Positions 10,701 to 64,000 of a stretch of DNA of 64,000 nucleotides are shown here, piece after piece. Under the pieces are notes generated by a model. It was not told where the DNA came from. It made no database searches and worked only from the letters and a program-made list of their open reading frames with translations. Within the stretch, counting starts at the first letter, position 1. Each line of letters begins with the position of its first letter. This stretch comes from Chlorokybus atmophyticus (Eukaryota; Plantae; Mesostigma and Chlorokybus algae): the NCBI GenBank assembly GCA_009103225.1, contig RHPI01001507.1, positions 686,151 to 750,150 of the forward strand. The letters are read 5' to 3'. Both the position numbers and the translations under genes were made by a program.

Positions 10701-11588
10701 CCGCACACGCACGCACACTCCTGTATGCTTATCACTGACCCCTCCCGCGCAGGTGCCGACTACATGCTCGTCCCCTCCCGTTTCGAGCCCTGCGGTCTGA
10801 TCCAGCTCCACGCCATGCGTTACGGCACGATCCCCGTCGTCGCCACAACAGGTGGACTTGCCGACACGGTGCGCGAGGGCGTGACAGGTTTCCAGATGGG
10901 TTGCTTCGATGTCGATTGCGAGACGGTGAATCCGGAAGACGTGGAGGCGATCGTGGAAGCGACCAAGAGAGCGCTGTCGGTGTTTGGGACGAAGCAGTTT
11001 GAAAGGATGAGATACGCGTGCATGAATCAGGACCTGTCGTGGAAGGTGCGTGTATAAGTGTGCGGTTTGCGAGCGTATACGTGTGCGTGTGCATGTATAT
11101 GCATGCCCACGTGGCATGCCCACGTGGGCATGCATATACAAGCATGCACACGCATGCTTGCAAACTGCACTTGTGCAAGCGCGCATGCGTGTGTGCTCGT
11201 GTGCGATGCACGTGCCTGTTCGCATGTGTGTGCACATGCGCGTATGCGTGTGCGTGTGCATGCGCATTTGCTTTTGTGCTTGCCCNGCCCCCCCCCCCCT
11301 TCCCTCTCCCTCATGTGCATGTGTGTGTGCGTGCGTGTATGTGAACATTCAATCACTAACGCGCACACATGATGTGCGCATGTATGTACCTGTGCACGTG
11401 CGCGCGTGTCTGTTCTCTTCCTTTTTGGGAGCAGCGCTGAGTTGTGTTCTGTTGTTCAGGGACCTGCCAAGGATTGGGAGCAGACTCTGCTGGACATGCT
11501 GCACCCGCCACAGAAGCGTGCTGCACAGGTGGGGCTGGATAAGGACGAGGTGGGCCCGCGCGCAAAGGAGAACATTGCCACACCTTGA
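7752..11588 (+). CDS. GBSS: Granule-bound starch synthase (GT5), 13 exons, with transit peptide
   Basis: Exons 7752-8126, 8204-8284, 8371-8469, 8566-8655, 8790-8853, 8979-9079, 9395-9694, 9939-10034, 10106-10225, 10339-10413, 10495-10546, 10753-11045, 11460-11588. Motifs include [67 protein letters not shown] and the C-terminal AKENIATP. Confidence 0.97.
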
Positions 11589-42672: not shown

Positions 42673-44612
42673 ATGAGGAGAGAGACCATCTTCACACCAT
42701 TTTCAACGTAAGGCACCATGCACCAACACAGCAGAGCGCTTATGCAACTGCCGTTGTCAAGGTACATTGTGTGTGTGAAGTCTGCATCTAGTTGCTGATT
42801 TTGTGGTGTGCCACAGGTTCTGTTACAGCTGTTGACAAGACGCTGCATGCGAGACACAACACGCATGTAATTCGTGCAGCCAGCCTTACTGCCCCATTGT
42901 GCTACAGGTATTGTTGTGTTAGATGTGCATGTGCGCGTGCATGCATGCATGCATGTTTGTATTTTTGGAAGCGTTTGCGGCTGTGTTATTGCACAACTGC
43001 AGACACACCTGTGTGTCTATGTATGCGTGCGTGTGTGCATGGGTGCCTGTTGTGTATATGTGTATGTAGGGGCGGGCGGGCAGGAGGGAGTGTGTGCACA
43101 TGCATTCGTGCGTGCCTGCATGTACGGCCACAGTGTTGTGCCCCAACTGCGATTGTGTCACTAAGGCATGCAACGCGTTTTTCGTAATGCGCATGTCTGT
43201 TCTGCAGGTGGACACGAGAGCTGAGCTGTTTGTGCAACGTAGCGTTGCACTCGTGCACCAGGTTGGCCAACCAAGTCCCTAATAGTACGTATAGCTGAAG
43301 GACATAAATACCTAAGACCTGCGGCAGTGTGTAAGGCTTATTGATTGTACGTGTATTGTGTATGTATTAGACCCATGTATTCAACCAAGCCCAATTGCGA
43401 AGCATGTGCGATGGCGCCCTCACATGTGCATACAATGACATGCACGCAAACACATGCATGCCGCACAGCAGCATACCCCATTTGTACACATACATGAACA
43501 CAAACCAATCTGCCAGGGTGCAAGCTGTGTGCAATTATGATAAGCGGAGGCTCTCGTGCACACGCGCATGTGCAAGTGCATAGATATGCAAGCAGACGTC
43601 GCTCTAAGCACTGTGTATACACTTGCATGTCAATTGTGTGCGCAAGTGTCCACATGTGTGCGCATGCGCACGAGCTAAGACAGCAATGCTGTGATATGCA
43701 TACGTGTCATGTGCTGCAAATTTCGACACAAGGGTGTGCGTGTGTGCGCGTGTGTGCGTGCATGTGTGCGTGTGCGTGGGTGGGTGAATGACACAGCAAC
43801 ACAGAGACACACCACCTGTGTTGATGATCGCACGCAAACGCATGCGTCCACACACATGTGTGGACACGTGTGCGCGTGTCCACACATGTGCATATGCCAC
43901 AAGCACAGTGTATAGGAGATAGTATGCTGCATTTGTGCTTATACAGAGTCCATACCACACTTGTGTACATGTGTGTGCGTGCATGTGTGTGGGTAAGTGG
44001 CACAACAACACAGAGGCATACCACTGCGCAACCTAATACTCACACGTAAATGCATGCGTCAGCACGCATGTGTGGACACGTATGCATGTGTCTAGATTAT
44101 ATGCAATGTTGTGATTGTGACCAACACAACATGCATGGCACATGCAGCAGCAAAACACACAACACATGCAACAATTGCACTTGTTAACCACCAGGCTATG
44201 TATACAAGCTAGCTAGGTACTTACCCTCACTACAACCCATACCTCGTTGAATGTGCATGTTTGATTACCTGCCACATTGCTGGTGGCATCAAATTGACCA
44301 GGACGATGGTGATAACATGTGCACCATAAGCACATTGTGCTTGTATGACAGAGCCTACCACAATTGTGTACTGTTGTGAGACGTGTACCCTTGTGGTGCT
44401 GTCTCTCATATACAATGACTTTCGTATGCTATGGGCACGCATGCATTACGACTGTGTGCACATATTACATGTCAGGCAGCCAGGAACAAGGTTAGCTTTA
44501 TGCCAAGCTACCAGTGTTTGAGATAGGCGGTCAACGCCAGTGACCAATCATATTCACATATACATCCGTAGAAACACCCCTCAACCCCAAATAAGCGCAA
44601 TCCCGCCCACGA

Positions 44613-46378
44613 CTATCCGCTGCGCGGCTCCCCCGCCTCTCCCGTCCTTCCCTCATCATCAACATCATCATCATCAACAACAACAACAACATCATCATCA
44701 TCATCAACATCATCATGAAAAATGGGGTCCGGTCGTAGCTGGCGGATGACAAACTTCGCAGCGCCTAGCGTCCTCCTGGTTGTTGCTTCCACGCGTGACA
44801 TCAACAGCACAATGCCCAATAGCTGGAGGTTGGGTCCGCCGCAAGCTTCCAAAATGTACTTAACTGCGTGCAGACTGATGCGCAGCTGCAGCGTGGCGGC
44901 ATCCTCATCTGTGAAAGACAGTTATAAGCAATGGCACAACTCAACAATCTAAACAAAGATTATACATACCTGTAGGATTCGACTTCGCCTCTCCCATGAC
45001 TAACCAACGCTGGTCAGCCTTAAGCAACACACCTCCTGCCGCATTAATCTCTAGTTGGCCCGAAACGTTCGGCGCCACTCTCTGTTGCCGCGCCACCTCC
45101 CACATTACAGCACTTAGTGCAGCACCATTACTGTCTGCAACCTCTGTACACAAGCAAGACAAGAGCGTAAGAACGGATGATAAACACCACGATAGGCCGA
45201 GTGTATCAACAAGAAGTAAACTCACGTTCTTGACCATAATTGCATGTGTAAACGAAGCGCTGGAACGTTCTGCGAACATCAGAGTTCAGGTGTTCCCCGA
45301 TCATGTCTTGCAAGTCTCCTGCAAGACCAGCAGCCTCCTTCATGCTGTGTAGCTCGAGCACACGCTGAAGTTGATGATACGTCTCTGTAACATCCGTGAG
45401 ATCCGGCACAGCGCGCCCCTTATTGGCTTTGATATGGGCAACGATCTGGTTTGTCGCAGCCTTAAGCGCCACTGGAAGGAAAGCAATGAAACCCTGCCGA
45501 ATTGCATCCTAAACAAGTTGTCACAGTCAGTAACAATCCAATGGCTGATCATTTAAGCAAAGAATTGAGTTCACACAACTTGAGCAAGCAACAATAAAGC
45601 TGTACTTGCCATGGCACTTACCACAGCAATCAATTTTGCAACCAAAGCAGCCTTGTTTGTTGGCAGGCCCCACTTGCCGCCATAAAACTCGAGAATCTTG
45701 TCAATATCAGAGAAGAGGCGGCCGTCACGGTACTTCTTCAACCGGCATTGTATGTTGGTGTAATTCTCCACCTCGCGACGAAAATACGCCATGACTTGAG
45801 ATTCGGCCATAATTCCGGAAGCTGCGACCAGTGCGGATGTGGCCTTCTGCTGGCTAAGAGATAACTGCTCCAGCTTCTCTATCCTGTCAAATGCCTTGGC
45901 AGCTTCCTGCCTGAACTTTTTGAACTGCCAGAAGCAACCGGACATGCTGAGAATCGGGCTTGACCAAGATTTGGTCAGACGGCCTAGCCTCACTTGAGGC
46001 TAGCCAACAAGAGAAGCATGTGCGTGTGATAGTGACGCACTTTTGATGCGTCACCATCACACGCAGGCATGCGTGTTAGCTAACTGTAACGCTACGAACA
46101 AGATTGCATGGTGGGCTTCCACTATTTGTAACCAATCACAGCAGCATGTAAACTGACTGAGTCATTGCCTGACGTACCCACTCTGGCGCGCCATCATCCT
46201 CTTCATTGGCGTCTCCCTCATTGGAGAAACTGAAACTAAGGGTATGATTCTGTCGGACCAACAAGGCCGGTGGCGCGGAACTTCTCAACGCAGGTCTTCT
46301 GCTGCTCCCAAGAGTGGTGCAACGGACCATCGCCGTGGCACTCTGCATCACACTTTGCATGCTGGCAGCTGACCGCAT
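44613..46378 (-). CDS. Putative organelle-targeted PD-(D/E)XK nuclease-fold protein, copy A (5 exons, 418 aa)
   Basis: Exons 46378-46178, 45924-45622, 45508-45226, 45143-44970 and 44908-44613. All introns are GT-AG with phases 0,0,1,1, giving an open frame of 1257 nt. Motifs include GIMAE, LEINAAGG..LVMGEAKS, DAATLQLRI and LLGIVLL. The gene model is well supported; the function call is weaker. Confidence 0.8.
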
Positions 46379-46525
46379 GAGTTAGAAAGGGTCAGTCAGT
46401 TGCTAGGTGGTTGCTGCACTGGAAGCAAGTGTGTCCAGGTCATAGTGCATAGCAGTCCATGCAGCTCACAACCAATCACCCACTAAACGGGTGCGTATTA
46501 CTGATGCAGAGGTGGTTGCAGCCAA

Positions 46526-46762
<237 letters not shown>

Positions 46763-47630
46763 ATCTCAGTAGTTGGCCTGCATCATGGTGACAACAATGC
46801 ATGGGGAAACGTATGAGACACCTGTTTAAGGTTTGAAGCAGAAAACAGCCAGCTGCAGTGGTATAGTAGCTGGAACAAGTGGGCAGATGGCTGTGGTGCT
46901 GTCGCTGGTGACAGATGTCTCGCCTACCTACAAAAGGAGCAGAGGTAAACTCCGGAGTGTCTCATCATCAGACTGAAAGACACACCCTGTTGTTAACACC
47001 ACAATGTAGCTGGTGTGATATGCTTACCAAGCAACTGCGAATGCCAGATCACTGAGCTGCGGTCTCAGAAAGAATATTGTGCAGGGAAGTGTTGCAGAAA
47101 GGACGGCGAAGGCGATACCCCAAGCGTTAACTGAAACACAAGTTGGTTTGCATGTGCGAGGCATCGTCACAACTGTGCGACTAACGCATGGGCCAGGATG
47201 GTAACATGTCACATCAAGTTCTGAACCACGCAGTTGATGCGGGCGTGCACATCTTCCGTGACAACTACACAAGCTGGTACACATCAAGATGCAACGCCAG
47301 ACACTGACGTCATGCACCCGAACCCCAACAAATGTCAAGGATTGCACAAGGAAGCACCGCATCGTGACTTACTTGTTGCAGAAAGCTTCCAAGCGTATTG
47401 AAAGGATGAATGGCAGTGGTCATACTGCTTAACAGACATGCAAAGCGATAAAACACAACACAACTTGTGTGAAAACAATGCCGCAGTCGCTGACTGCTAA
47501 GCATGGCCACCGCCCCATAGCAACTCTCTGGTAAGCCATCAGACAGAACGCGTAAGAAACGGTGTGAGACGGGGGACACTCACCTACACAGTCCTGCTGC
47601 CCCTTCGCCCGCCGCTGAAGCCGTTGTTGC

Positions 47631-47664
<34 letters not shown>

Positions 47665-48769
47665 TAGACAGTAAGGGAAGGGCTTTTGCTGGAGACAGAC
47701 TGACGTGACAACGCTCCCTCAGACGCGTTAAACAACATACCTCCGAAGCCCTGAGCATTTATGCCTTATGCAGGCCAGCTATTTGTACGTAGGCTTTGCA
47801 AATTCGTATACATGTACAAAGCTGTACATGAACTACACAGCGCTGTCTTTTTTGTTAATACTAGACTTTCAGCATTTGAGTCATTGCTGAATTACTAAAG
47901 CTGTTTTTACTACATTTTGCAGTCTAAAGGTATCTCAAGTTTTGGCTATTATCATAACATGACGCTGCATATGGATTTAACATGTTACATTCTGAATGCT
48001 ATACATCGCAATTTATATGTAACGCGGTAGCTATATCTAGCATAGCTGTTTTTGTTCATGTGTAGATGCAAAATATCAATGCTGCTGCAATGTCAATCGA
48101 CATAAAAGCATCGAAGAGAACTTATGGCACCCATCGATACTTAGCAACTTACCCACACGCGCAGGCATGCGCCTCAGCACATGCACACAAACTTCCTCCC
48201 TCTTATGCCACTCCAATGTTATTATATGCATAAAAGCATACCAAAGACAGTGAATAGCTTCACACGTTGCCGCAAATGCAATCGCTTTGCAAGCAACCTC
48301 GTTTGGCAATAATGCTACAAAGCTGTCAAGTCAAAGTAAGTTGTTTGCATAAATATACAAACGACGTGTGTGGTTCACAGCGTGATGCTATACTCGACCG
48401 TACGAGTTAATCATAACTGCAAGCGCACCAGTGAAATCAATACGCAATTTGTCATTGTAAGCAATGGCAACAAAGAAATGAAGCCAATAAAAGTAGTCTA
48501 CATGACCATCATGCTTACAAGCACATTGCCATACAAATCCATTTGAGTGTCGTTTTTGCATGCACACTAGGCTACATGTCCTATTGACAAAGTGTGGTGA
48601 ATGAATGAACGAAACAACACTGCCGGTATACCGGTATATATCTACCTGAGGTAGACTACCTCAGTGCCAGCCTCGTTACGAGGCTGATAAGCATGAGAGG
48701 GCCCCTTCGTGCCTATCAGATCTCTGATAGGACTCCCTTGAGCTGAAAGCTTTCAGCTGAGCTGAGCTG

Positions 48770-50513: not shown

Positions 50514-50577
50514 TAAATCGCACAGGCTGATGAATGCACGCACTCATGTGCGTGCATTCATCAGCCTGTGCGATTTA
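50514..50577. repeat. Perfect palindrome, 30-bp arms with a 4-nt loop, inside a ~107-bp tandem duplication
   Basis: taaatcgcacaggctgatgaatgcacgcac-tcat-gtgcgtgcattcatcagcctgtgcgattta. Confidence 0.97.
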
Positions 50578-53199
50578 TTCATCAGCCTGTGTGCAGATGC
50601 GCGTTCAACAGGGAGTGGAATAGCACAACAAGTAACATGAATGCATGCACTCATGTGCGTGCATTCATCAGCCTGTGTGCAGATGCGTGTATAACAGGGA
50701 GTAGAATAGCACAACAAGTAACAAGTTTCTCCATGTGCGTATGCTCTGCGTTGAGCAGGAAGGCAGCAAAAGCGTGGTGGGTGTGGGTGGCGCCAACTTG
50801 TACTTTACTGTAGCCGAATGCACCAAGCACTGGACGGTCACCTTGCTGAAGGGCATCGGCGCACCCAACTCCCTCCTGCGTCAGCATCGACAGACAGAGC
50901 ATTTCAAGATACTTTGACGCCGTTCAACAACCTGAACAGTCCATGACTTGGAAGACGTCTGCAAATCTCCACCCAGACTCATGTGGTTGATGAACAAAAT
51001 TACCATCAAGGCCTTGGTCGCCGGTGCATGCGTCGTGTTGTTTAAAGTAATCATGTTCTTCATCAATGACATCCGTAGGTTGTGTTCTTAGAGCCATTTA
51101 GACTGACATCACTTAGAGTAACAATGGCAGCTTGTCAAAATTGCGCAAATGTTGCCCCTATTGCAGTGTGTTATGCATGCCGTATGGCGTTGAACTTGAC
51201 TCAGCAGTGCAGCATGTGCTCAGCAACAACCCAGGCAGCATCGACCTTTCATCATTTTGAGAGAAGTTGTATGGCTTAGTGATTGTCTGTGGGGCAAAGC
51301 ATAGCAGCGCCAGCAGTGCAGCCTAGTCATCAACACGAGAGTAGGGTCAGATGCAGCGTGTACGTGTGTGGATGTGCTGTGGTCGTTGGTGTGCCGGATG
51401 TGACTGATGTGTGCGCGAGTTTGGTGTGCTGTATGAGAGGGAGATTGCACAGTGGGTGTGCATGTGGTCGTATAGATGTTGAACGTGCAGTGGCTCTGCT
51501 AGCAGTGCTTCTTAGAGGCAGAGCAACAAGACATACCGAGGCACCAAGCCTGGGGCGGGGATGACACTCGTGCGTGGTATGTGGGTGTGTGGGTGTGGTC
51601 CGGTTTGTTGGTGTTGTGTGCGTCATTAGATACATTACTTATTACTTTGGGCAGTGCATAGTTGAGGCTGTGGTATCAGTGTGCACAGTAGTAGGGGTAA
51701 AGTAGTGTGTTAGGCAGTGGATGAACCCGATGGTTAACTTCACAATAGTGTGATTGGTATGCGTTGTGTCTCTGCATGCTGCTGACTGTGCATATCACCA
51801 TGCATGTGCATTGCCGTTTCGCATTGTTTGTACACAGACACAACTCATATGGGTATGGCAAGATGGGTAAGACTGTATGCTCTGTGAACTCTGCTGTGAT
51901 CCACGTTACCTGTGCAAATGAAGCTTTGGAGGTGTGCTGCGAGTCGTGTGTGCAGTTGAACTTAGCACTAGCACCTGCTTGTGAAACACACAGCTGTGTC
52001 TGGTCAAGGCCGCTTTCAAGCAACAACTTGAGAACGAGAAACAGGCTGCATTGCTGCTCCGCTGACTTAGCAAGTTGGAGCAACAGTTTTGCAGCGCAAT
52101 GGCACTGCGCTTCGCAAGCGAGGTTGCATTCATCTTGTTGCATGAAGTCAACCACCCGCTTGCATATGTGCGATGCAACTTGCTCGTAATCAATCATCAC
52201 TTCATGCACACAATACTAGAATGGCACAAGTGGGGATGCGTGTGCGTGCATGTGTGCGTGTGTTGGTGTGCGTTTGTACGCAAGTGGGTGGCTAGGTGGC
52301 TGCCATAAGCTCTTCTCATCGCTTCAACTTGAAGCGATGAGAAAGTAGCTCAACTTGCAGTCAAACCCGTCCACACTTTCGCACGATCTCATATCTGTAT
52401 CTAGTGTAGCATGTTGAACCATCATAAGCATTGCAGCCGCATGATGTTGTGGAAAGAGCTGAGGCTGACTGAGGCTATGTCATTGAATTGCAGGTCAAGA
52501 CGGTTTTTACATTGGCAAACAATGTCTCGATATTGTCAAAGACCCAGTGCACATTGAAAGGCTCTTTCTTTACTATTTTCTTCAAAGGCTTCTCAATTTG
52601 CAATACAGGTGAGTAGCAGCTGTTACATGTGCTGTTGCCAACACATGGTGGGTACCTTAGTCTGAATCGCTGGCAGGCCCCATCACTGGCCTTGGCGGGG
52701 TTGTGCCGGTTGTGAAATAGAAGAAACGGGCTTCTTCAATTGTTCCGCAACTGCAGGAGCCGTGGTGTGCTGTCAAGCAAGTGGTTTCATGTTCCATGCC
52801 TTCTCTGCTCTGCTCTGCCTATCCCTGGCACAAGAGTCGGCACCGCATTCTGTTTGGTGAGTTGTGCCCTTGGGAGAAAACTCTGCAAGCGTTTCAGCAA
52901 GGGTGAGCCTTGAATAGTGGCTGTTGTCAACGGCAGCTTGCCGTGCATAAGCTGGGGCTGAGAGACTCGCCATTGGTCAACCTCAAGCTTGCTGGCATTG
53001 GTATGTCGTTATCATACAGTTGGCCACCTTCGCTCATGTGCGGCTCGCTTCTTCTCAATCAATCAAGATTGACCACTTGGCAGATGTGATATTCTTGACA
53101 CCGCCTGGCAAAGTTGCGACCAGTGTGCTTTGGTGTTTGGTGCGCGTACATGTGGCCATGTTGTCACGAGTCGTTGCAATGTCGCCATAAACTAGTGCT

Positions 53200-54317: not shown

Positions 54318-56074
54318 CTACCAACTATGCGGCTGCCTCGCCTCTCCCTCCCTTCCCCCATCATCATCATCACCATCATCGTCGCTGTCATGGAACATGG
54401 GGTCTGGTCGCAGCTGGCGGATGGCGAACTTCATGTCGCCTACTGTCTCTTTGCTGGTTGCCTCCACACGCGACAACAACAAGATGATGCCAAGCGGGTG
54501 AAGGCAAGGTCCGCCACACGCCTCCAAGACGTACTTGACAGCGTGCGCGCTTATGCGCAGCTGCAATATGGCTGCGTCCTTATCTGAATAAAAGCAACCA
54601 TAAACATTATTGCAAGCAAGAAAGCAATTAGCAGCACGTATGACAGAGCAGCAGAGTACATATGACACAGCAATTACCAGTTGTACATACCTGTAGAGCT
54701 GGACTTCGACTCCCCCATAACCAACCAGCGGTCTTCAGCCTCAAAGAGCACGCCTCCTGCTGCGTTGATCTCCAATTGGCCCGAGACGTTCGGCGCCACT
54801 TTTTGATGCCGTGCCACCTCCCACATGACAGCACTTAAAGCAGCACCGTTGGTGTCTGCCACCTCTGTTCATAGACAACATGAGAGGGCACCAATAGATC
54901 ATAACTGACACGAGATGCCAAGTGTACATACCTACAAGAAGTCATCTCACCTGCTTGACCATTGATGCATGTGTAGACAAAACGTTGAAAAGTTCTGCGA
55001 ACATCGTGATTCAGATATTTCCCGATCATATCTTGGAAATGTCTTGCCAGACCGGCAGCCTCCTCCATGCCTCGACGCTTCAACATGCTCCGAAGTTGAT
55101 GGTATGTCTCTGCAACATCCACTAGATCTGGCACAACGCGCCCTTGATTCTCGTTGATATGGGCGAGGATCCGCTTTGTTGCAGCCTTGAGCGCAACAGG
55201 AAGAAAAGCGCTGAAACTCTGCCGAATTGCATCCTAAAGAACACCTACTAGTATCAATAAACAACCAGTGGCTGATCAGTCGAGCAAAATTGCCTGTGTC
55301 CGTGCAACTTGAGCAAGCGATGTCAAGCTGTAAGTCAACAACTATGAAATCTTACTTGCCATGACACTTACCACAGCGATCAACTTCATGACCAAAGCGC
55401 CTTTGTTTGTTGGCGTGCCCCATCGGCCGCCATAAAACTCGAGAATCTGATCGATTGTAGTGAAAAGTTGACCGTTAGTGTACTTCTTCGGCTGCCGGCA
55501 CTTCATGCCGGTGTAGTTCTCCACCTCATGAACGAAATGCGCCATGAGCTGGGCTTCAGCCATAATTCCAACAGTTCCGACCAGTGCAGATAAGGCCTTC
55601 TGCTGATTGGCAGCGGCCTTTTGTAGATTGGCAGCGGCCGTGCGTGCCTCCTCCCAATACCTTGTGAACTGCAATGGCAGCGAAGCAATCAGAACGATGG
55701 GAACTGGGACGGGAACCAGACCATGCAGCTACTTGCACGAGGCTGGCTACCAAGAGCAGTGTATGCGTGTGATAGTGAGGCACTGTTGGTGCGTCACTAT
55801 CACATAGGCATGCGCGTTGGTTACCTGCAATACTACGGACACCATTGCATTGGGTTGCTTCTACTCTTCAGTACTTCACACCGGCAACGTGCGCAGCATG
55901 AAATGTGATTGCACCTACCCACTGTGGCTCGCTGTCATCCTCCTCACTGCCATCTCCAGCACTGGAGAAACTGCAGCTTGGAGTAAGGTTATGGTTGTTC
56001 TTTCCAACCAACAAAGATGGCGCCGGACCTTGCAATGCAGGTCTCCTCCCGAGAGTGGTCAGTGACCTGACCAT
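54318..56074 (-). CDS. Putative organelle-targeted PD-(D/E)XK nuclease-fold protein, copy C (5 exons, 391 aa)
   Basis: Exons 56074-55919, 55668-55372, 55233-54951, 54864-54691 and 54583-54318. Intron positions and phases match copy A and the frame is open. Motifs include GIMAE, LEINAAGG..LVMGESKS and DAAILQLRI..PLGIILL. Confidence 0.8.
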
Positions 56075-56329
56075 TGCACTCTGCGTGCTGGCAGCCTGAC
56101 CGCAAGAGTGAGGAGAAAGCGTCAGTCACTTGCTGGGTGGCTGCTGCACTGGAAGCAGGTGTGTCCAACTTACAGTTCACAGCAGCATGCTCCAACAGCA
56201 TTCTATATAGCTCACAGCTGCTTACCCACTCTGGACGGGTGAGTTGACGGGAGCATCGGTGGTTGCAATCAAAATCGCCTTGTAATACTTGGCTACTCTC
56301 TGCAAGCCGCACAACAGACCTTAAGCAAC

Positions 56330-56332
<3 letters not shown>

Positions 56333-56407
<75 letters not shown>

Positions 56408-56435
56408 NAGAGAGAGAGAGAGAGAGAGAGAGAGA
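56333..56435. repeat. (AG)n microsatellite upstream of copy C
   Basis: Direct observation. Confidence 0.98.
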
Positions 56436-59400
56436 ACACAATAGCTTGTCTGTATCGTGGTGACAACATTGCATGCAGGAACGTGTACCACAACCAGCAG
56501 AGTTGATTGAGAAACAGTCACCTGTCGGATAACTCTAAACAGGTGGGCAAACGCTGGTGACAGCTGGTTCGCCTAACTGCAGAAAGAGCAGTGATAAGCA
56601 GGCATGTGTGTTAGACTGCAATTAACACCAGGAGGTTACCATAACAATGTAGCTGGCGTGACATTACCAAGCCGCAACTGCCTAAGAAACATCGAGCCAC
56701 AGTCTTGAAGGGCAAATCTACAGCGAGGTGCTGAAGAAAGGATAGGGCGATCCCCAAAGCGTCAACTGTAAAACGCAAGTTAGTTTGCATTTGAGAGGCA
56801 TCGTCACAACTGTTTGCGACCAATGCATGGGCCAGCCAAGATGTAGCAGGTCACATGAGATTGCACCATGCATGACTTTCATGCAAAATGACTAACTATA
56901 ATCACAGGTTGTACCGATGAGCACAGGGCAGACAAAACATACACGTGCTGCTATCAAATAGCAACGCCGTCATGTACCCAATCCAAGACTGATAACCCTA
57001 ACATGTCATGCATTCATGAATGCACAATAAAGCCCTCAAGAACCATGACTTATGGTAGAAGCTGCTTCTAGAAGTTGTATACATAAGCTGGATGGACAGT
57101 AGTAAACAAATTGCTTGAACTGGCAAAGCAATACAATAGAAATACAACACCAGTCGCTGCCTACCGCAAAGCATGCCCACCCGCGCCTTGGCCGCTGTCT
57201 GGCAAGCCGCTGGACAGGGCGTGTGAGCGAGCGAGCGGTGAGAGGGTAAGAGGGAGTGAGAGACTCCTGAGTATTTCTGCTGCCCCTTCGCCCGCCGCCG
57301 CCGCCGCCCGCGCCCAGACAGTAATTTGACACGACAAATGACAAATGACGTGACATCTCTCTCTCTCCAGGCCCTTGAAGGCCTCGCCTGATCAGCCAGG
57401 TCCCACCCAAAAAAACTTTCTCTTCCTCCCTCAACACGCTGTGCAAGGCGGCCTACCGGTGAACAGTACGCACAGAGGGCAAGCGTTGCACATGTAGCAT
57501 GCTACAGTGTAGCGACCTAAAACTGCAAAGCTATGTCTACAGGGCTGTACATGGACTACACATAGGCTATATACAAATAAGACAAGACACCGCTATGTCA
57601 CATAGCGGTGTCTTGTCTTAATTGTACATATTTTAGCAGCTGCTGAATCCATCAACCAATCCACTATCAAGCTAAACTTAACACCGGCTTTTACACACAA
57701 TCTTGCACTTGTAAGAGGTAGCTTAACCTTTTGCTGCACAGCACAAAATGATGCCGCACGCACATGAATGCACCATGCTGCGCTCGCTATGATATATGGT
57801 TGGTTTCTATGTATATGTAGCTACTGGTATGTAGCTACAGCGTTTCGTATGGTTATTTTTTCTCAAGTGCGGATATTACATATGATATGATGTTAATATT
57901 GCTACAAAGTCACTACCATGTTGATACTTGATGCTAGCTATCGATAGCTACCATTGATCAATGATAGCTTGTGCGTCCACCGATACTAGCACTTACCCAC
58001 ACCCGCACGCATGCATGCGCACGAACCCCCTTATGTGCTCCGCTCTGACGTTATTATTACTATATATATGATGGAATAAATTAAGACAGTTATCGGCATA
58101 ACACATTGTAGTGGATGCAAGCGTAAAAGAAAGCATCCTCATTGGCTTGTACTGCCGCACTTTGAAAGCTGTTCCCTCTATATAACATGAACGCCTTAAA
58201 CATCATGACTAATAATTGTGAGTTTAACAAGCATGATGCTATGTCAATTGTATAGAGAAATCATAGTAGAAAGCGCATCTTTATACATGTACGAATATGT
58301 AAGGTTGAAATGCAATCTGAAGAGCAGTAATGAAATGAAGCATACAGTCAACACGACCATCACGCCTACAAGCACGTTGCATTTATGTCATATATATGCA
58401 TATGAGTGTTGTAATTGCATGCACACCAGACCAAGTGTCCTGTTGATAACCTTCAATGAACGCATGGATGAATGAAGGAGTGAATGAATGAATGAATCAA
58501 CGAACGAGTGACTGAATGATTGAAAGAAGTACTTGCGTTGTTTCATTATCAGCCTCGTAACGAGCCGGGCAATGGCGTAGATACATGTGTACCTGGTATC
58601 TACTCCAGTGCCAGCCAGTCTGGCCCAGCCTCGTTGCGAGGCTGATAAGCACGAGAGGGCCTCTTCGTACCTATTCATCTCTCTGACAAGCCCTTTCAGC
58701 TCAGCTGAGCTGATTGCTGCTGGCCTGGTGGCGGTATTGCTGGTGGTGTTTGCGTGGGGCGTGGGGTGAGGCCCTACGGCCAAGTGTGGCATATATGGAG
58801 GAGGCGGATCTGCTGCCGCCAGTGGCTGGGTACCGGTGTAGACCCCCCTACGGTGGCAGCCCCGGAGCCCGTTGCTAGGCGTGGGTGCGCATGCTGCTGC
58901 TGATGACTGCCCATGTCAACGAGGGTTTTGGCTGGACGCTTCTCTCTCTCACGCAATTGGGTGGACATTTCAACATGTCCACTCGCATGTGTAGCCGCAG
59001 GTCGAAATCAACACACCGTGTCTACCAGAGCTACTGCTTGAATGCAGCTGACATGGCGATGGCAACACCTGCGACACTACACAGTGAGTGTCCACTTTCC
59101 CAGCGTTCGTGTGCATGCCGGCTTCGGTGCAAATGCACGCGTCAGCACGCATGTGTGGACACGTATGCATGTGTGTAGAATATATGCAATGCTATTGTGA
59201 CCAACACAACATGCGTGGCACATGCATCAGCAAAACGCACAACACGCAACGATTGCACTTGATAACCATCGGGCTATGTATACAAGCTAGCTACCAAGGT
59301 AGCTACCTTTATTGCAACCCGTACCCCGTTGGATGTGCATGCAGGCATGATTGATTACTAGCCACATTGTCGGTGGAATTATTACTAAACAATACGACGA

Positions 59401-59744
59401 CGATATTATGTGTGACCATAAGCACAACGGCTTCTATACCAGAGCCGTAAGCAAATTGTGTTTATGCCATTTGTCACGGTGACAGAGCCTACCACAATTG
59501 TGCACTTCTGTGCAAACGTGTACGCTTGTGGTGCTGTCTCTCGTATGCAATGACTTTTGTATGCTCTGGGCAAGCATGCATTACAAATGTGTGCACATAA
59601 TGCATGCAATGCAAGCAGGAACAAGGTTAGCTTTATGCCAAGCTGCCAGTGTTTGGATGTGGCGGTTGACAAAAGTAACCAACTATATTCACATATACAT
59701 CTATAAAAACCACCCATCAACCCCGAATCAGCGCACTCTCGCCT

Positions 59745-61530
59745 ACGATTACCCACCGCGTGGCGCGCCCCCCTCCCCTTTCCTTCCCTCATCATCATGA
59801 TCAGTCTTTATTTAAACATAAGCATGCTCTTGTAAAAGGTTAGATTGGTTGACAGATCGACTACGAAAGATCATCATCATCATCATCATCAACATCATGA
59901 AAATGGGGTTCGGTTGTAGCTGGCGAATGACCAACTTTGCATCTCCTAGCGTTCTCTTGTTTGTTGCGTCCATGCATGACATTAACAACACGATGCTCAA
60001 TAGTTGGAGGCTAGGTCCGCCGCAAGCCCCGAAAATATAAAATCACCAGCAGACTTGTGCAGCAGCGTGGCGGCATCCTCATCTGATAAAGATAGTTATG
60101 AGCAATTGTACAACTTAGCAATCCAACTGATGATTATACATGCTTGTGAGATGCGACTCGTGACTTCGCCTGTCATGTCCAAGCGACTGCCGGACCTCAT
60201 GGATGTTATGGAGACGTACTACCAACTTTAGCGCGTGTTGGAGCTGCAAGGCATGAAGGAGGTTGCTAGCCTTGCAGGAGACTTGCAAGACATGATCGGG
60301 GAACACCTGAACTTCAATGCGCGCAGAACATTCCAGCGCTTCGTTTACACGTGCACTTATGGGCAAGAACGTGAGTTTACTTCTTGTTCATACACTCGGC
60401 CTACAAGAAGTAAACTCACGTTCTTGCCCATAAGTGCACGTGTAAACGAAGCGCTGGAATGTTCTGCGCGCATTGAAGTTCAGGTGTTCCCCGATCATGT
60501 CTTGCAAGTCTCCTGCAAGGCTAGCAGCCTCCTCCACTTGTAGCTCCAGCACGCGCTGAAGTTAGTGGTACGTCTCTGTAACATCCGTGACATCCGGCAC
60601 AGAGCGCCCCTTGTTGGCTTTGATATGGGCAACGATCTGGTTTGTCGTAGCCTTGAGCGCCACAGGAAGGAAGGCAATGGAACCCTGCCGAATTGCATCC
60701 TAAAGAAGTGATCACAGTCAGTAACCGTCCAATGGATGATCATTCAAGCAAAGAGTTGAGTTCACACAACTTGAGCAAGCAACAATAAAGCTGTACTTGC
60801 CATGGCACTTACCACAGCAATCAACTTTGCAACCAAAGCAGCCTTGTTTGTTGGCAGGCCCCACTTGCCGCCATAAAATTCGGGAATCTTGTCAACATCA
60901 GAGAAAAGGCGGCCGTTACTGTACTTCGTCAACCGGCAATGTATGTTGGTGTAGTTCTCCATCTCGCGAGGAAAATACGCCATGAGTTGAGATTCGGCCA
61001 TGAGTCCGGAAGCTGCGACCGGTGCGGATGTGGCCTTCTGCTGGCTAACAGATAACTGCTCCAGCTTCTCTATCCTGTCAAATGCCTTGGCAGCTTCCTG
61101 CCTGAACTTGTTGAACTGCCAGAAGCAACCGGCCATGCTAAGAATTGCGCTCGACAAAGCCTTGGTCAGACGGCTTAGCCTCAGTTGAGGCTAGCCAACA
61201 AGAGAAGCGTATGCGTGTTAGCTAACTGTAACGCTACGAACAAGATTGCATGGTGGGCTTCCACTATCTGTGACCAATCGCAGCAGCATGTAAACTGACT
61301 GAGTCATTGCCTTAACGTACCCACTGTGGCGCGCCATCATCCTCTTCATTAGAGTCTCCCCCATCGGAGAAACTGCAGCGTGGTACAAAGGTATGCTTGT
61401 TCTGTCGAACCAACAAGGCCGGTGGCGTGGAACTTTTCAACGCAGGTCTTCTGCTGCTCCTAAGAGTGGTGCAACGGACCATCGCCGTGGCACTCTGCGT
61501 CGCACTTTGCATGCTGGCAGCTGACCGCAT
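59745..61530 (-). pseudogene. Pseudogene copy D of the nuclease-fold family
   Basis: Exons 1-2 are open. Exon 3 has TAC CAC TAA plus a small deletion. Exon 4 is replaced by an inverted duplicate of exon 3. Exon 5 is frameshifted and carries a ~65-bp insertion. Confidence 0.9.
60188..60599. repeat. Long inverted repeat: ~200-bp arms, inner 124 bp perfect, 15-nt loop
   Basis: 60264-60387 is the exact reverse complement of 60403-60526 (checked base by base). The outer arms are diverged. Confidence 0.97.
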
Positions 61531-61671
61531 GAGTTAGAAAGGGTCAGTCGCTATATGGTTGCTGCACTGGAAGCAAGTGTGTCCAGTTCATAGTGCATAG
61601 CAGTCCATGCAGCAGACAACTAATCACCCACTGGACGGGTGCGTATTACCGATGCAGAGGTGGTTGCAGCC

Positions 61672-61711
<40 letters not shown>

Positions 61712-61712
61712 N

Positions 61713-61777
<65 letters not shown>
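61672..61777. repeat. (AG)n microsatellite upstream of copy D
   Basis: Direct observation. Confidence 0.98.
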
Positions 61778-61780
<3 letters not shown>

Positions 61781-64000
61781 TCTCAGTAGTTGGTCTGCAT
61801 CATGGTGACAACAAAGCATGGGGAAACGTATGAGACACCTGTTTGAGGTTTGAAGCACAAAACAGCCAGCTGCAGTGGTATAGTAGCTGGAACAAGTGGG
61901 CAGATGGCTGTGGTGCTGTCGCTGGTGACAGATGTTTCGCCTGCCTACAAAAGGAGCAGAGATAAACTCCGGAGTGTATCAGACTGAAAGACACACCATG
62001 TTGTTAACACCACAATGTAGCTGGTGTGATATGCTTACCAAGCAACTGCGAATGCCATCACTGAGCTGTGGTCTCAGAAAGAATGTTGTGCAGGGAAGTG
62101 TTGCAGAAAGGACGGCGAAGGCGATACCCCAAGCGTTAACTCAAGTTGGAAACACAAGTTGGTTTGCATGTGCGAGGCATCGTCACAACTGTGCGACTAC
62201 CGCATGGGCCAGGATGGTAACATGTCACATCAAGTTCTGAACCATGCAGTTGATGCGGGCGTGCACATATTCCGTTACGTTTACACAAGTTGTCACGCAA
62301 GCTGGTACACATCAAGATGCAACGCCAGACACTGACGTCATGCACCCGAACCCCAACGTGTCAAAGGATTGCACAAGGAAGCATTGCATCGTGACTTACT
62401 TGTTGTAGAAGCTTCCAGAAGTATCGAAAGGGTGAATGGCAGTGAACATACTGCTTTACAGACATGCAAAGCAATAAAACACAACACAACTTGTGTGAAA
62501 ACAATGCCGCAGTCGCTGACTGCTAAGCATGGCCACCGCCCCATTGCGACTCTCTGGTAAGCCATCAGAAAGAGCGCGTAAAAAACGGTGTGAGAGGGGG
62601 GACACTCACATACACAGTCCTGCTGCCCCTTCTCCCGCCGCTGAAGCCGTTTCCGCCGCCGCCTCCGCCGTTGCCGCCGCCGTCGCCACTGCCGCCTGGA
62701 CAGTAAGGGAAGGTCCTATTCTGGAGACAGATTGACGTGACGTGCTTATCAGCCTCGTTACGAGGCTGATAAGCATGAGAGGGAACTCCCTTTCAGCTGA
62801 GCTGAGCTGAGCTGAGCGCTGCTGGCCTGGTGGCGGTGGGGGTGGCGGTGTGGTGGGGCGTGGTGGTGGGCTCCAGCTAAGCTTGGCGTCTTCCTGAAGA
62901 GGAGGCGGAGCTGCTGCTGCCGGTGGCTGGGCACTGGTGTGGACGCCCCTACGGTGGTCGCCCTGTCAGAGCCCGTTGAGCCAGGTGTGGTGCGCATGCT
63001 GCTTGACCATGACTGCCCCTTGTCAACAAGGGCTGTGCTGGACGTCTCTCCCACGTGCATTCATGGCAACGTTTCCACTCGCATGTGTAGCCGCAGGTTG
63101 ACATCCACACCGTGTCTACCAGAGCTAGCTGGCGCCGCTCAACAGTCGACATGGGGATGGCAACTTCTGCAACACTATGCAGTAAGTGCCAGCAGCATTG
63201 TCCAAGACTTGTGTGCATGTGCGGGCTCCAGTGCAGGCTGTGTGCATTATCGCGTGAGCGCGTGCTTGGGTGCATGGGTTGCAGGCGTTAGTGTACATGT
63301 GAGTGTGTACATTGGTGTACGCCTGTGTGCGCAGCCGCACAAGCGCTTAGCTTTAACTAAGTTTGAGTCGTGTCATGGGCAGAAGTTCACCTACCGGCGT
63401 GCACTACCAATATGCTTGCCAGACAGTCAAGGTGGTCTCGCGCCCATCAGAACAACGGGTACGTGCCTCCTCATGTCAGCGCTAGCTTGTCACTTACAAA
63501 ATTGAAGCACTACTCTCAAAGGCTAAATGGTAGACTATATGCACATGCACAGACACGCGCACGTTGACATACAAAAGTAGCCTTTGCGGTGCAGGCATTG
63601 TGCGAAAATCCGCACAGAGAGCTATGCAAGTGAGCCGCTTGCGCATCTTGCAAACAACTCAAAGAGCGGGCGCCGAAGCCGCTCCGCGCAAGCGCAGAAG
63701 GTATGCAACCGCTGCATGTTGCTGCGTTCAATGATTGCACTGGAACACTCAACAACTTGTGCAGCAGGCGCTTTCTATGACAGCTGTGCAGTTTCCAACG
63801 ACTATGCACTTGAGCAGCCTGCACACGAACAGGCAAGTGTGCAGTGGTGCGTGAGTCTTTGCTACTTGTGTGTTCATTGTTGTTTCAGAAAAATACAACA
63901 CATGCGCACACATGCATGTGCACTCATAGGTTTTAACGGACACGCACGCGCACGCGTATGCACGCACACAGGTGAGCGAGCAGTTCTGGCTGCTACCAGG

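What the first reader, a model, noticed from the sequence alone, without database searches (positions are those of the whole stretch)
60188..60599. Pseudogene copy has swapped its catalytic exon for a 124-bp perfect hairpin of the family's own coding sequence
Seen: in copy D the exon carrying EIN..GEAK is gone, and an inverted duplicate of exon 3 sits in its place. The inner 124 bp of the two arms are identical and share D-specific substitutions absent from copy A (cccataagtgcacg, gcgcattgaa). The outer ~75 bp differ, and only the native arm has the stop and deletion. So the duplication looks old but the stem has been homogenised. Established: inverted duplication of a gene fragment is the recognised origin of plant hairpin-siRNA and proto-miRNA loci (Allen model). 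Inference: D may be a disarmed copy that produces small RNAs silencing intact copies A and C, forming a nuclease plus RNA-antidote module. Neutral intrastrand gene conversion would also explain the perfect stem.
Basis: partly seen in the sequence, partly recalled or inferred. Interest (0 to 1): 0.8.

Follow-up and report, generated by a model that had tools for sequence, protein, structure and literature searches.

The report
Fold-back hairpin in a dead gene copy
A decaying extra copy of an alga-specific gene in Chlorokybus lost most of one exon to a backwards copy of the neighbouring exon, and ordinary DNA-copying errors best explain this real 200-base hairpin, with no evidence that it is a silencing device.

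Summary
Copy D lies on the minus strand of a Chlorokybus atmophyticus scaffold. It carries a perfect 124-nt inverted repeat (60264-60387 / 60403-60526) around a 15-nt spacer. Outer arms (60188-60250 / 60537-60599) are 84% alike. The inverted arm replaces intron 3 and about three quarters of exon 4.

Two corrections:
- The last 32-45 nt of exon 4 survive, with decayed codons of the GEAK motif.
- The inverted arm has its own stop (TAG).

D is a decaying pseudogene: two stops, frameshifts in exon 5 and a lost splice donor. A and C are under purifying selection.

New findings:
- The spacer is intron 3 in the orientation of the inverted arm.
- A-D identity falls from about 93% upstream of the hairpin to 81% downstream.

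Best reading: an old fold-back duplication, then A-D gene conversion that stops where homology breaks, then a recent arm-to-arm template switch that homogenised the inner stem and inverted the spacer. These are known neutral processes.

The small-RNA antidote idea is untested. Stem 21-mers match A perfectly 29 times and C never. The published Chlorokybus assembly is short-read only (k=85), so "perfect" needs read-level confirmation. The nuclease label rests on weak leads. The scan holds notes on similar fold-backs elsewhere in this same genome.

The parts
60403..60599 (-). Native arm of the hairpin: the last 180 nt of D exon 3 (60420-60599) plus the first 17 nt of intron 3 (60403-60419, including the GTGAGT donor). 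It carries a TAA stop at 60562-60564 and a 3-nt deletion at 60536/60537.
   Evidence: Collinear with A 45209-45408 and with C. Stop and deletion seen.
60388..60402 (+). 15-nt spacer (loop). It is homologous to intron 3 nt 18-32 of copy A, read in the orientation of the inverted (plus-strand) arm, so it is inverted relative to the native arm.
   Evidence: In the alignment, the inverted arm continues into the A-like intron sequence and the native arm does not.
60188..60387 (+). Inverted arm: a copy of exon 3 (60188-60370) plus intron 3 nt 1-17 (60371-60387) on the opposite strand. It has its own TAG stop at 60229-60231. The outer 76 nt are only 80% identical to A.
   Evidence: (I1: 88% to A 45193-45408).
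60264..60526 (.). Perfect palindrome core: 124 + 15 + 124 nt.
   Evidence: Base-by-base check. As sense RNA, 60150-60640 folds at -382 kcal/mol, z = -38.7.
60143..60187 (-). Remnant of exon 4: the last 32-45 nt, with decayed GEAK codons and a 7-nt insertion. The intron 4 donor GT is lost.
   Evidence: Local alignment to A 44930-45030 and three-way alignment.
59893..60085 (-). D exon 5, decayed: 5-nt and 2-nt deletions shift the frame. About 79% identical to A.
60813..61530 (-). D exons 1 (61321-61530) and 2 (60813-61130), still open. Against A, dN/dS is 0.70, with several D-specific Leu-to-Pro changes.
45226..45508 (-). Exon 3 of intact copy A, the only plausible trans target of stem-derived siRNAs. 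The longest exact match to the stem is 43 nt.
54951..55233 (-). Exon 3 of intact copy C (public model P0001, Chrsp86S08031). It is too diverged to be targeted: 73% identical to the stem, longest exact match 9 nt.

Best explanation
Copy D is a dead tandem paralogue of a Chlorokybus-specific gene family. The family may encode a PD-(D/E)XK-type nuclease with an N-terminal targeting peptide.

Inferred order of events:
1. A and D duplicated. The divergence that remains 3' of the hairpin is about 19%.
2. A fold-back or template-switch error during replication or repair replaced about 190 nt with an inverted copy of the 200-215 nt just upstream. The lost part was the rest of intron 3 plus the first ~132 nt of exon 4. 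The copied part was the end of exon 3 plus the start of intron 3. This killed the putative catalytic core.
3. Ectopic gene conversion between A and D refreshed D's 5' part. It had to stop where collinear homology ends, which is at the palindrome.
4. Recently, a template switch or gene conversion between the two arms overwrote the loop-proximal 124 nt of the inverted arm with the native arm's sequence and inverted the 15-nt spacer.

No selection is needed for any step. If D is still transcribed from its A-like promoter, the pre-mRNA would fold into a dsRNA stem of about 200 bp that buries the exon 3 splice donor. Dicer-like enzymes could then cut it into siRNAs matching copy A as a by-product.

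Shown here: the anatomy, the decay of D, the divergence strata and the spacer orientation. Inferred: the order of events and the mechanism.
For: - Anatomy.
- D is a pseudogene. It has a TAA in exon 3 and a TAG in the inverted arm, exon 5 frameshifts, a lost intron 4 donor, and A-D exon 2 dN/dS of 0.70. A-C dN/dS is 0.10-0.24.
- Arm differences change abruptly from 0/124 to 12/73 (p = 4e-6).
- The spacer is homologous to A's intron 3 in the orientation of the inverted arm. Intermolecular template switching between repeat arms is documented to homogenise arms and invert spacers (PMC8604942). Template switching is also documented to create and maintain hairpins (PMC8794818, PMC10710096; titles and abstracts).
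- Strata of A-D identity: 92-94% (locally up to 99%) 5' of the hairpin and 81% 3' of it. The inverted arm's outer part is 80% identical to A and the inner stem 91%.
- Junction microhomology is at most 3 nt, by my reading of the alignment.
- Other short-spacer palindromes lie in the same window at 50514-50577, 57568-57630 and 11083-11151. The scan has many fold-back notes on this genome. Fold-back events therefore look like a common background process here.
Against: - No orthologous locus or population data polarise the events. Paralogues A and C serve as outgroups.
- Documented arm homogenisation with spacer inversion involves arms of 16 bp or less. A 124-nt tract could instead be ordinary recombinational conversion, or a second fold-back event.
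- The inverted arm's excess of changes (10 against 3, 6 of them C>T) could reflect faster mutation of that arm and not an older stratum.
- A perfect stem in an otherwise decaying gene is also what selection for dsRNA would give.
- A short-read assembly may overstate how perfect the stem is.
Confidence: 0.75

Rival explanations
1. Functional hairpin-RNA (proto-MIR or hpRNA) locus. D is transcribed, its stem is diced into siRNAs, and these hold down the intact paralogue A. That would be an RNA antidote to a potentially harmful nuclease. The perfect stem would be kept by selection, or by conversion that selection favours.
For: - The predicted stem is about 200 bp long and very stable.
- D keeps an A-like 5' region, 96-99% identical at 61.7-62.2 kb, and open exons 1-2.
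- 29 of 177 stem 21-mers match A exactly and 36 more have one mismatch.
- Chlorokybus encodes algal-type DCL, two AGO proteins and an RDR-like gene (PMC7994812).
- There is precedent in the inverted-duplication model of plant MIR genes (PMC3237417, PMC2582634) and in Drosophila hpRNAs that silence their parent genes (PMC10292708, PMC10317233).
Against: - No expression or small-RNA data exist. PMC7994812 calls small-RNA knowledge for streptophyte algae almost non-existent.
- C cannot be targeted: no 21-mer has fewer than 2 mismatches.
- The stem is more diverged from A (91%) than the neighbouring 5' sequence (92-99%).
- Outer-stem mismatches are not compensated in the sense transcript: only 3 of 12 are G:U-compatible.
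- Neutral template switching explains the perfect stem and the inverted spacer together.
Confidence: 0.08
2. Assembly artefact, whole or partial. Either the two arms are not adjacent in the genome, or the true arms differ at a few inner positions that the assembler merged.
For: - The published C. atmophyticus assembly is Illumina-only: SOAPdenovo with k=85, GapCloser and Pilon (PMC7027972).
- The window has single-N gaps and a 105-N gap typical of such scaffolds.
- The perfect tract (124 nt) exceeds k, so both arms share k-mers. Sparse differences would form bubbles that can be merged.
- Another follow-up in this genome also raised assembly error for a similar structure (s1-189381).
Against: - The outer inverted arm is a distinct sequence, 80-84% identical to every other copy, so an inverted exon 3 copy must exist in the genome.
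- Collinear homology to A continues in the right orientation on both sides.
- There are no Ns within 1.1 kb.
- 85-mers spanning the spacer must have been present in the reads.
- Bubble merging cannot create the jump from 16% to 0% difference.
Confidence: 0.1
3. D still makes a truncated protein, exons 1-2 plus 45 codons of exon 3 (about 220 aa), that acts as a regulatory or inhibitory N-terminal fragment. The hairpin would be incidental.
For: Exons 1 and 2 of D are open and their splice sites are intact.
Against: - A-D exon 2 dN/dS is 0.70.
- By my comparison of the A, C and D exon 2 translations printed, most polarisable replacements are on D's lineage, including three Leu-to-Pro changes.
- No protein other than P0001-P0004 turned up, but the search windows would miss a 220-aa product.
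Confidence: 0.05

Closest known systems
Template-switch mutations in inverted repeats: quasipalindrome correction with spacer inversion (Ripley model; PMC8604942, PMC8794818, PMC10710096)
   Same: Short spacer (15 nt). Arms perfect next to the loop, with an abrupt end of the perfect tract. Spacer inverted relative to the ancestral orientation. A hairpin created from local sequence in one step.
   Different: The documented cases have arms of about 4-16 bp. Here the homogenised tract is 124 nt and the whole arm about 200 nt, so recombinational gene conversion is an equally good label. The ancestral state is inferred from paralogues, not from orthologues.
Fold-back (inverted duplication) rearrangements by fold-back priming at breaks, or microhomology-mediated template switching (PMC10622511)
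   Same: An inverted copy of the adjacent sequence with a short spacer, little junction microhomology (3 nt or less) and an accompanying deletion.
   Different: Here the event is only about 200 nt long and returns to the original template, replacing a stretch of similar length. It does not produce a large or dicentric rearrangement.
Inverted-duplication model of young plant MIR and hairpin-siRNA loci (Allen model; PMC3237417, PMC2582634)
   Same: A hairpin built from an inverted duplicate of a protein-coding paralogue, with extended complementarity to the parent family beyond a single miRNA site. The organism has DCL and AGO genes.
   Different: No small RNAs, no transcript and no target cleavage are known. 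The arms lie inside a pseudogene, one arm exonic and the other in intron position. Only one of the two intact neighbours is similar enough to be targeted.
Drosophila hpRNA suppressors derived from their target genes (Nmy/Tmy against Dox-family drivers; PMC10292708, PMC10317233)
   Same: The concept matches: an inverted-repeat copy of a potentially harmful gene sits in the genome and could silence the intact paralogue by endo-siRNAs.
   Different: The Drosophila loci have genetic and small-RNA proof and evolve in step with their targets. Here there are no functional data, and harm from the parent gene is speculation.

Membership tests
Hairpin-RNA / proto-MIR locus (inverted-duplication origin) | Inverted duplicate of target-gene sequence forming a long foldback | tested here: met
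Hairpin-RNA / proto-MIR locus (inverted-duplication origin) | Transcript spanning both arms | not testable with these tools
   No RNA-seq access. Exact-product look-ups of D ORFs in public assemblies found nothing.
Hairpin-RNA / proto-MIR locus (inverted-duplication origin) | 21-24-nt small RNAs mapping to the stem | not testable with these tools
   No small-RNA data. PMC7994812 states that such knowledge is almost non-existent for streptophyte algae.
Hairpin-RNA / proto-MIR locus (inverted-duplication origin) | Near-perfect complementarity to a functional target | tested here: inconclusive
   Met for A: 29 perfect 21-mers and a 43-nt exact run. Not met for C: minimum 2 mismatches and a 9-nt exact run.
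Hairpin-RNA / proto-MIR locus (inverted-duplication origin) | Host has Dicer-like and Argonaute genes | not tested
   Literature only: Chlorokybus has algal-type DCL, two AGO and an RDR-like gene (PMC7994812).
Template-switch homogenised inverted repeat | Short spacer, and a perfect tract adjoining the spacer that ends abruptly | tested here: met
   15-nt spacer. Arm differences are 0/124 inside against 12/73 outside.
Template-switch homogenised inverted repeat | Spacer inverted relative to the ancestral sequence | tested here: met
   The spacer matches A's intron 3 nt 18-32 in the orientation of the inverted arm, not of the native arm. The ancestral state is inferred from a paralogue.
Template-switch homogenised inverted repeat | Imperfect ancestral state seen in an orthologue or sister lineage | not testable with these tools
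   No other Chlorokybus genome was reachable. The protein family was found only in this species.
PD-(D/E)XK nuclease superfamily (parent gene family) | Acidic residue ... (D/E)xK motif on adjacent strands | tested here: inconclusive
   EIN ... GE(A/S)K is present in A, C and P0002. It is changed to KVD ... GEAT in P0003 and P0004.
PD-(D/E)XK nuclease superfamily (parent gene family) | Alpha-beta-beta-beta-alpha-beta core fold | tested here: inconclusive
   The AlphaFold2 model from 4 sequences has the right order of elements, but mean pLDDT is 41, so no fold search was run.
PD-(D/E)XK nuclease superfamily (parent gene family) | Significant profile match to a member family | tested here: not met
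   No Pfam, NCBIfam or PDB match and only marginal PHROG hits. Language-model features point to clan members (UL24, PDDEXK_1/3/18, XisH, NucS_C) at 0.79-0.87, below the 0.9 lead threshold.

The most novel reading that the evidence does not exclude
The D hairpin is a working hairpin-RNA gene in one of the earliest-branching streptophyte algae. A dead paralogue is kept transcribed, and its stem is kept perfect by repeated arm-to-arm and A-to-D conversion. Its siRNAs tune or silence the intact putative nuclease gene A. This would be a plant-lineage counterpart of the Drosophila hpRNA suppressors, and a snapshot of the first step of the inverted-duplication route to MIR genes.
Probability: 0.08. 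Interest if true: 0.65.

Novelty: new member of a known kind. Interest (0 to 1): 0.3.

Why it matters
As it stands, this is a clean, datable example of known processes: fold-back duplication, paralogue conversion, and arm homogenisation with spacer inversion. Together they built a 200-bp hairpin from coding sequence in a streptophyte alga. Such loci are the raw material proposed for new hairpin-siRNA and miRNA genes, so it is a convenient test case once small-RNA data exist for Chlorokybus. It also shows that a palindrome can set the boundary of gene conversion between tandem paralogues. If the stem does yield siRNAs against copy A, it would extend the inverted-duplication model to the base of the streptophytes. 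That is currently unsupported.

Tried and rejected
- **Family scans.** Pfam on each A exon separately, and on P0001 and P0002, found nothing. One Pfam call failed on a wrong frame for C. NCBIfam and PHROGs gave nothing usable. PDB sequence and profile searches gave only chance-level hits.
- **Structure.** The AlphaFold2 model of the C-terminal domain, built from a 4-row alignment, had pLDDT 41. It was too poor for a fold search, so none was run.
- **Relatives.** An exhaustive HMMER search with A exon 2 found only two Chlorokybus proteins. The word-based search with the C-terminal domain found four, all from Chlorokybus.
- **Independent assemblies.** Exact-product look-ups for P0001, P0002 and two D ORFs found nothing on record, so no independent assembly of the locus could be compared.
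- **RNA families.** Rfam over the whole window gave no match.
- **Fourth copy.** tblastn and blastn within the window found only A, C and D.
- **Methylation-driven deamination of the inverted arm.** 4 of 6 C>T changes are in CWG context, but p = 0.08, and the old-stratum reading explains the excess. This was not pursued.
- **Selection on RNA pairing.** Outer-stem mismatches are mostly non-wobble in the sense transcript, so the idea was rejected.
- **Joined exons.** Exons were handled separately by reference, and the public model P0001 was used for whole-protein work.

Full report
**What is there**

The window comes from Chlorokybus atmophyticus. An exhaustive protein search with exon 2 of copy A returned a 456-aa protein, P0001, whose sequence is the spliced product of copy C. 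Its source name is jgi Chlat1 Chrsp86S08031. This confirms a lead from earlier scan notes.

The family lies on the minus strand and has five exons. Within the window there are three copies:
- A, about 44.6-46.4 kb
- C, about 54.3-56.1 kb
- D, about 59.7-61.5 kb

Exons were searched one by one by reference, and the public model P0001 served for whole-protein work.

**The observation**

An inverted repeat of 134 nt at 99% complementarity, with a 15-nt spacer, sits at 60254-60387 / 60403-60536. A further 63 nt per arm are 84% complementary. Base by base, the perfect part is exactly 124 nt, 60264-60387 / 60403-60526.

The three-way alignment of A, C and D shows the following:
- D follows A through exon 3 and 17 nt of intron 3.
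- It then runs into the spacer and the inverted copy.
- It regains homology only near the end of exon 4.

The remnant of exon 4 is 32-45 nt long (about 60143-60187). It holds decayed GEAK codons and a 7-nt insertion, and the following splice donor is lost. So "the exon is gone" is about three quarters true.

The native arm has a TAA stop (60562-60564) and a 3-nt deletion. The inverted arm has its own TAG stop at 60229-60231.

As sense RNA the region folds into a stem of about 200 bp at -382 kcal/mol, z = -38.7.

**D is a pseudogene; A and C are not**

A against C gives dN/dS of 0.10-0.24 over exons 3-5. A against D gives 0.70 in exon 2. By my comparison of the A, C and D exon 2 translations, most replacements that can be polarised fall on D's lineage, including three Leu-to-Pro changes. 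D's exon 5 has 5-nt and 2-nt deletions.

**History read from the sequence**

1. *Spacer orientation.* The spacer plus the inverted arm is collinear with exon 3 and intron 3 nt 1-32 of copy A. The native arm carries only intron nt 1-17. The spacer is therefore inverted relative to the arm that continues into the rest of the gene.

2. *Arm differences.* They jump from 0/124 to 12/73 (Fisher p = 4e-6).

3. *A-D identity changes at the hairpin.*

| Segment | Identity to A |
|---|---|
| 5' of the hairpin | 92-94%, locally up to 99% |
| 3' of the hairpin | 81% |
| Outer inverted arm | 80% |
| Outer native arm | 88% |
| Inner stem | 91% |

3' of the hairpin, both A-specific and D-specific changes are raised.

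The simplest order of events is:
- an old A/D duplication;
- an early fold-back in D;
- later A-D conversion of the 5' part, which cannot pass the point where collinear homology ends;
- a recent arm-to-arm event that copied the native inner arm onto the inverted one and flipped the spacer.

Template switching between repeat arms is documented to do exactly this pair of things, homogenise the arms and invert the spacer, when the first switch is intermolecular (PMC8604942). It is also documented to create and maintain RNA hairpins and new miRNA genes (PMC8794818, PMC10710096). The documented arms are much shorter, so ordinary gene conversion between arms is an equally valid label.

The replaced stretch (about 190 nt) and the inserted stretch (200-215 nt) are similar in length. 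The left junction has at most 3 nt of microhomology, by my reading of the alignment.

The same window holds three more short-spacer palindromes. The scan has many fold-back notes for this genome. Such events therefore look like a common background process.

**The silencing idea**

Chlorokybus has DCL, AGO and RDR-like genes (PMC7994812). D keeps an A-like upstream region. Dicing of a D transcript is therefore conceivable.

Several points count against a selected function:
- Stem-derived 21-mers match A perfectly in 29 of 177 cases. None matches C with fewer than 2 mismatches, and the longest exact runs are 43 nt against A and 9 nt against C.
- The stem is not better conserved against A than its surroundings.
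- Outer-stem mismatches are mostly non-wobble in the sense transcript.
- Everything else in D decays.

No expression or small-RNA data could be reached. I rate a selected antidote function at about 8%. By-product siRNAs are more likely but untested.

**The nuclease label**

No profile library or PDB search recognises the protein. Only four family members were found, all in Chlorokybus. Two of them have the motif altered, EIN to KVD and GEAK to GEAT.

The AlphaFold2 model is poor (pLDDT 41), though its element order fits the PD-(D/E)XK core. Language-model neighbours are almost all from that clan, but they score below the lead threshold. "Putative PD-(D/E)XK-like" is as far as the evidence goes.

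**Assembly caveat**

The published C. atmophyticus assembly is Illumina-only: SOAPdenovo with k=85, GapCloser and Pilon (PMC7027972). The window shows the matching gap pattern, and the nearest N is 1.1 kb away.

The diverged outer inverted arm and the collinear flanks show that the inverted copy is real. A perfect tract longer than k could still hide a few merged differences, so perfection needs read-level confirmation.

**Verdict**

The structure is real and well defined, and known neutral mechanisms explain it. It is a new member of a known kind. Interest is modest unless small RNAs are found.

Noticed in passing
window 59516-62740 compared with 44380-47700: A-D identity steps from about 93% (up to 99% at 61.8-62.2 kb) upstream of the hairpin to about 81% downstream. 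Gene conversion between the tandem copies seems to stop at the palindrome.
   Followed up: partly
window 50514-50577 (and 50637-50677), 57568-57630, 11083-11151: There are three more short-spacer palindromes. One has 30-nt perfect arms with a 4-nt spacer and a third arm copy about 90 nt away. One has 31-nt arms with a 1-nt spacer. One has 32-nt arms with a 5-nt spacer. Fold-back events look frequent in this genome.
   Followed up: no
P0003, P0004 (Chrsp466S06084, ChrspC229825S00907), elsewhere in the genome: Two paralogues carry KVD ... GEAT where A, C and P0002 have EIN ... GE(A/S)K. They may be catalytically dead family members.
   Followed up: no
window 44600-46400 (copy A): Copy A looks intact and constrained, yet no product of it appeared among the public proteins found with the C-terminal domain, while copy C's product did. 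A may be unannotated or mis-modelled.
   Followed up: no
window 60188-60263: Of the 10 changes private to the outer inverted arm, 6 are C>T on the plus strand and 4 of those are in CWG context (p = 0.08). This is a weak hint of methyl-cytosine deamination, or simply an older sequence stratum.
   Followed up: partly
window 46472-46758, 56275-56473, 61640-61790: Each family copy has a (GA)n microsatellite at the same place upstream, each interrupted by a single N (46605, 56408, 61712). These are probably gap-closing scars.
   Followed up: no
window 46178-46378, 61321-61530: Exon 1 encodes an Arg/Ser/Ala-rich, acid-poor N-terminus followed by an acidic stretch. It looks like an organelle transit peptide. 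This was judged by eye only.
   Followed up: no
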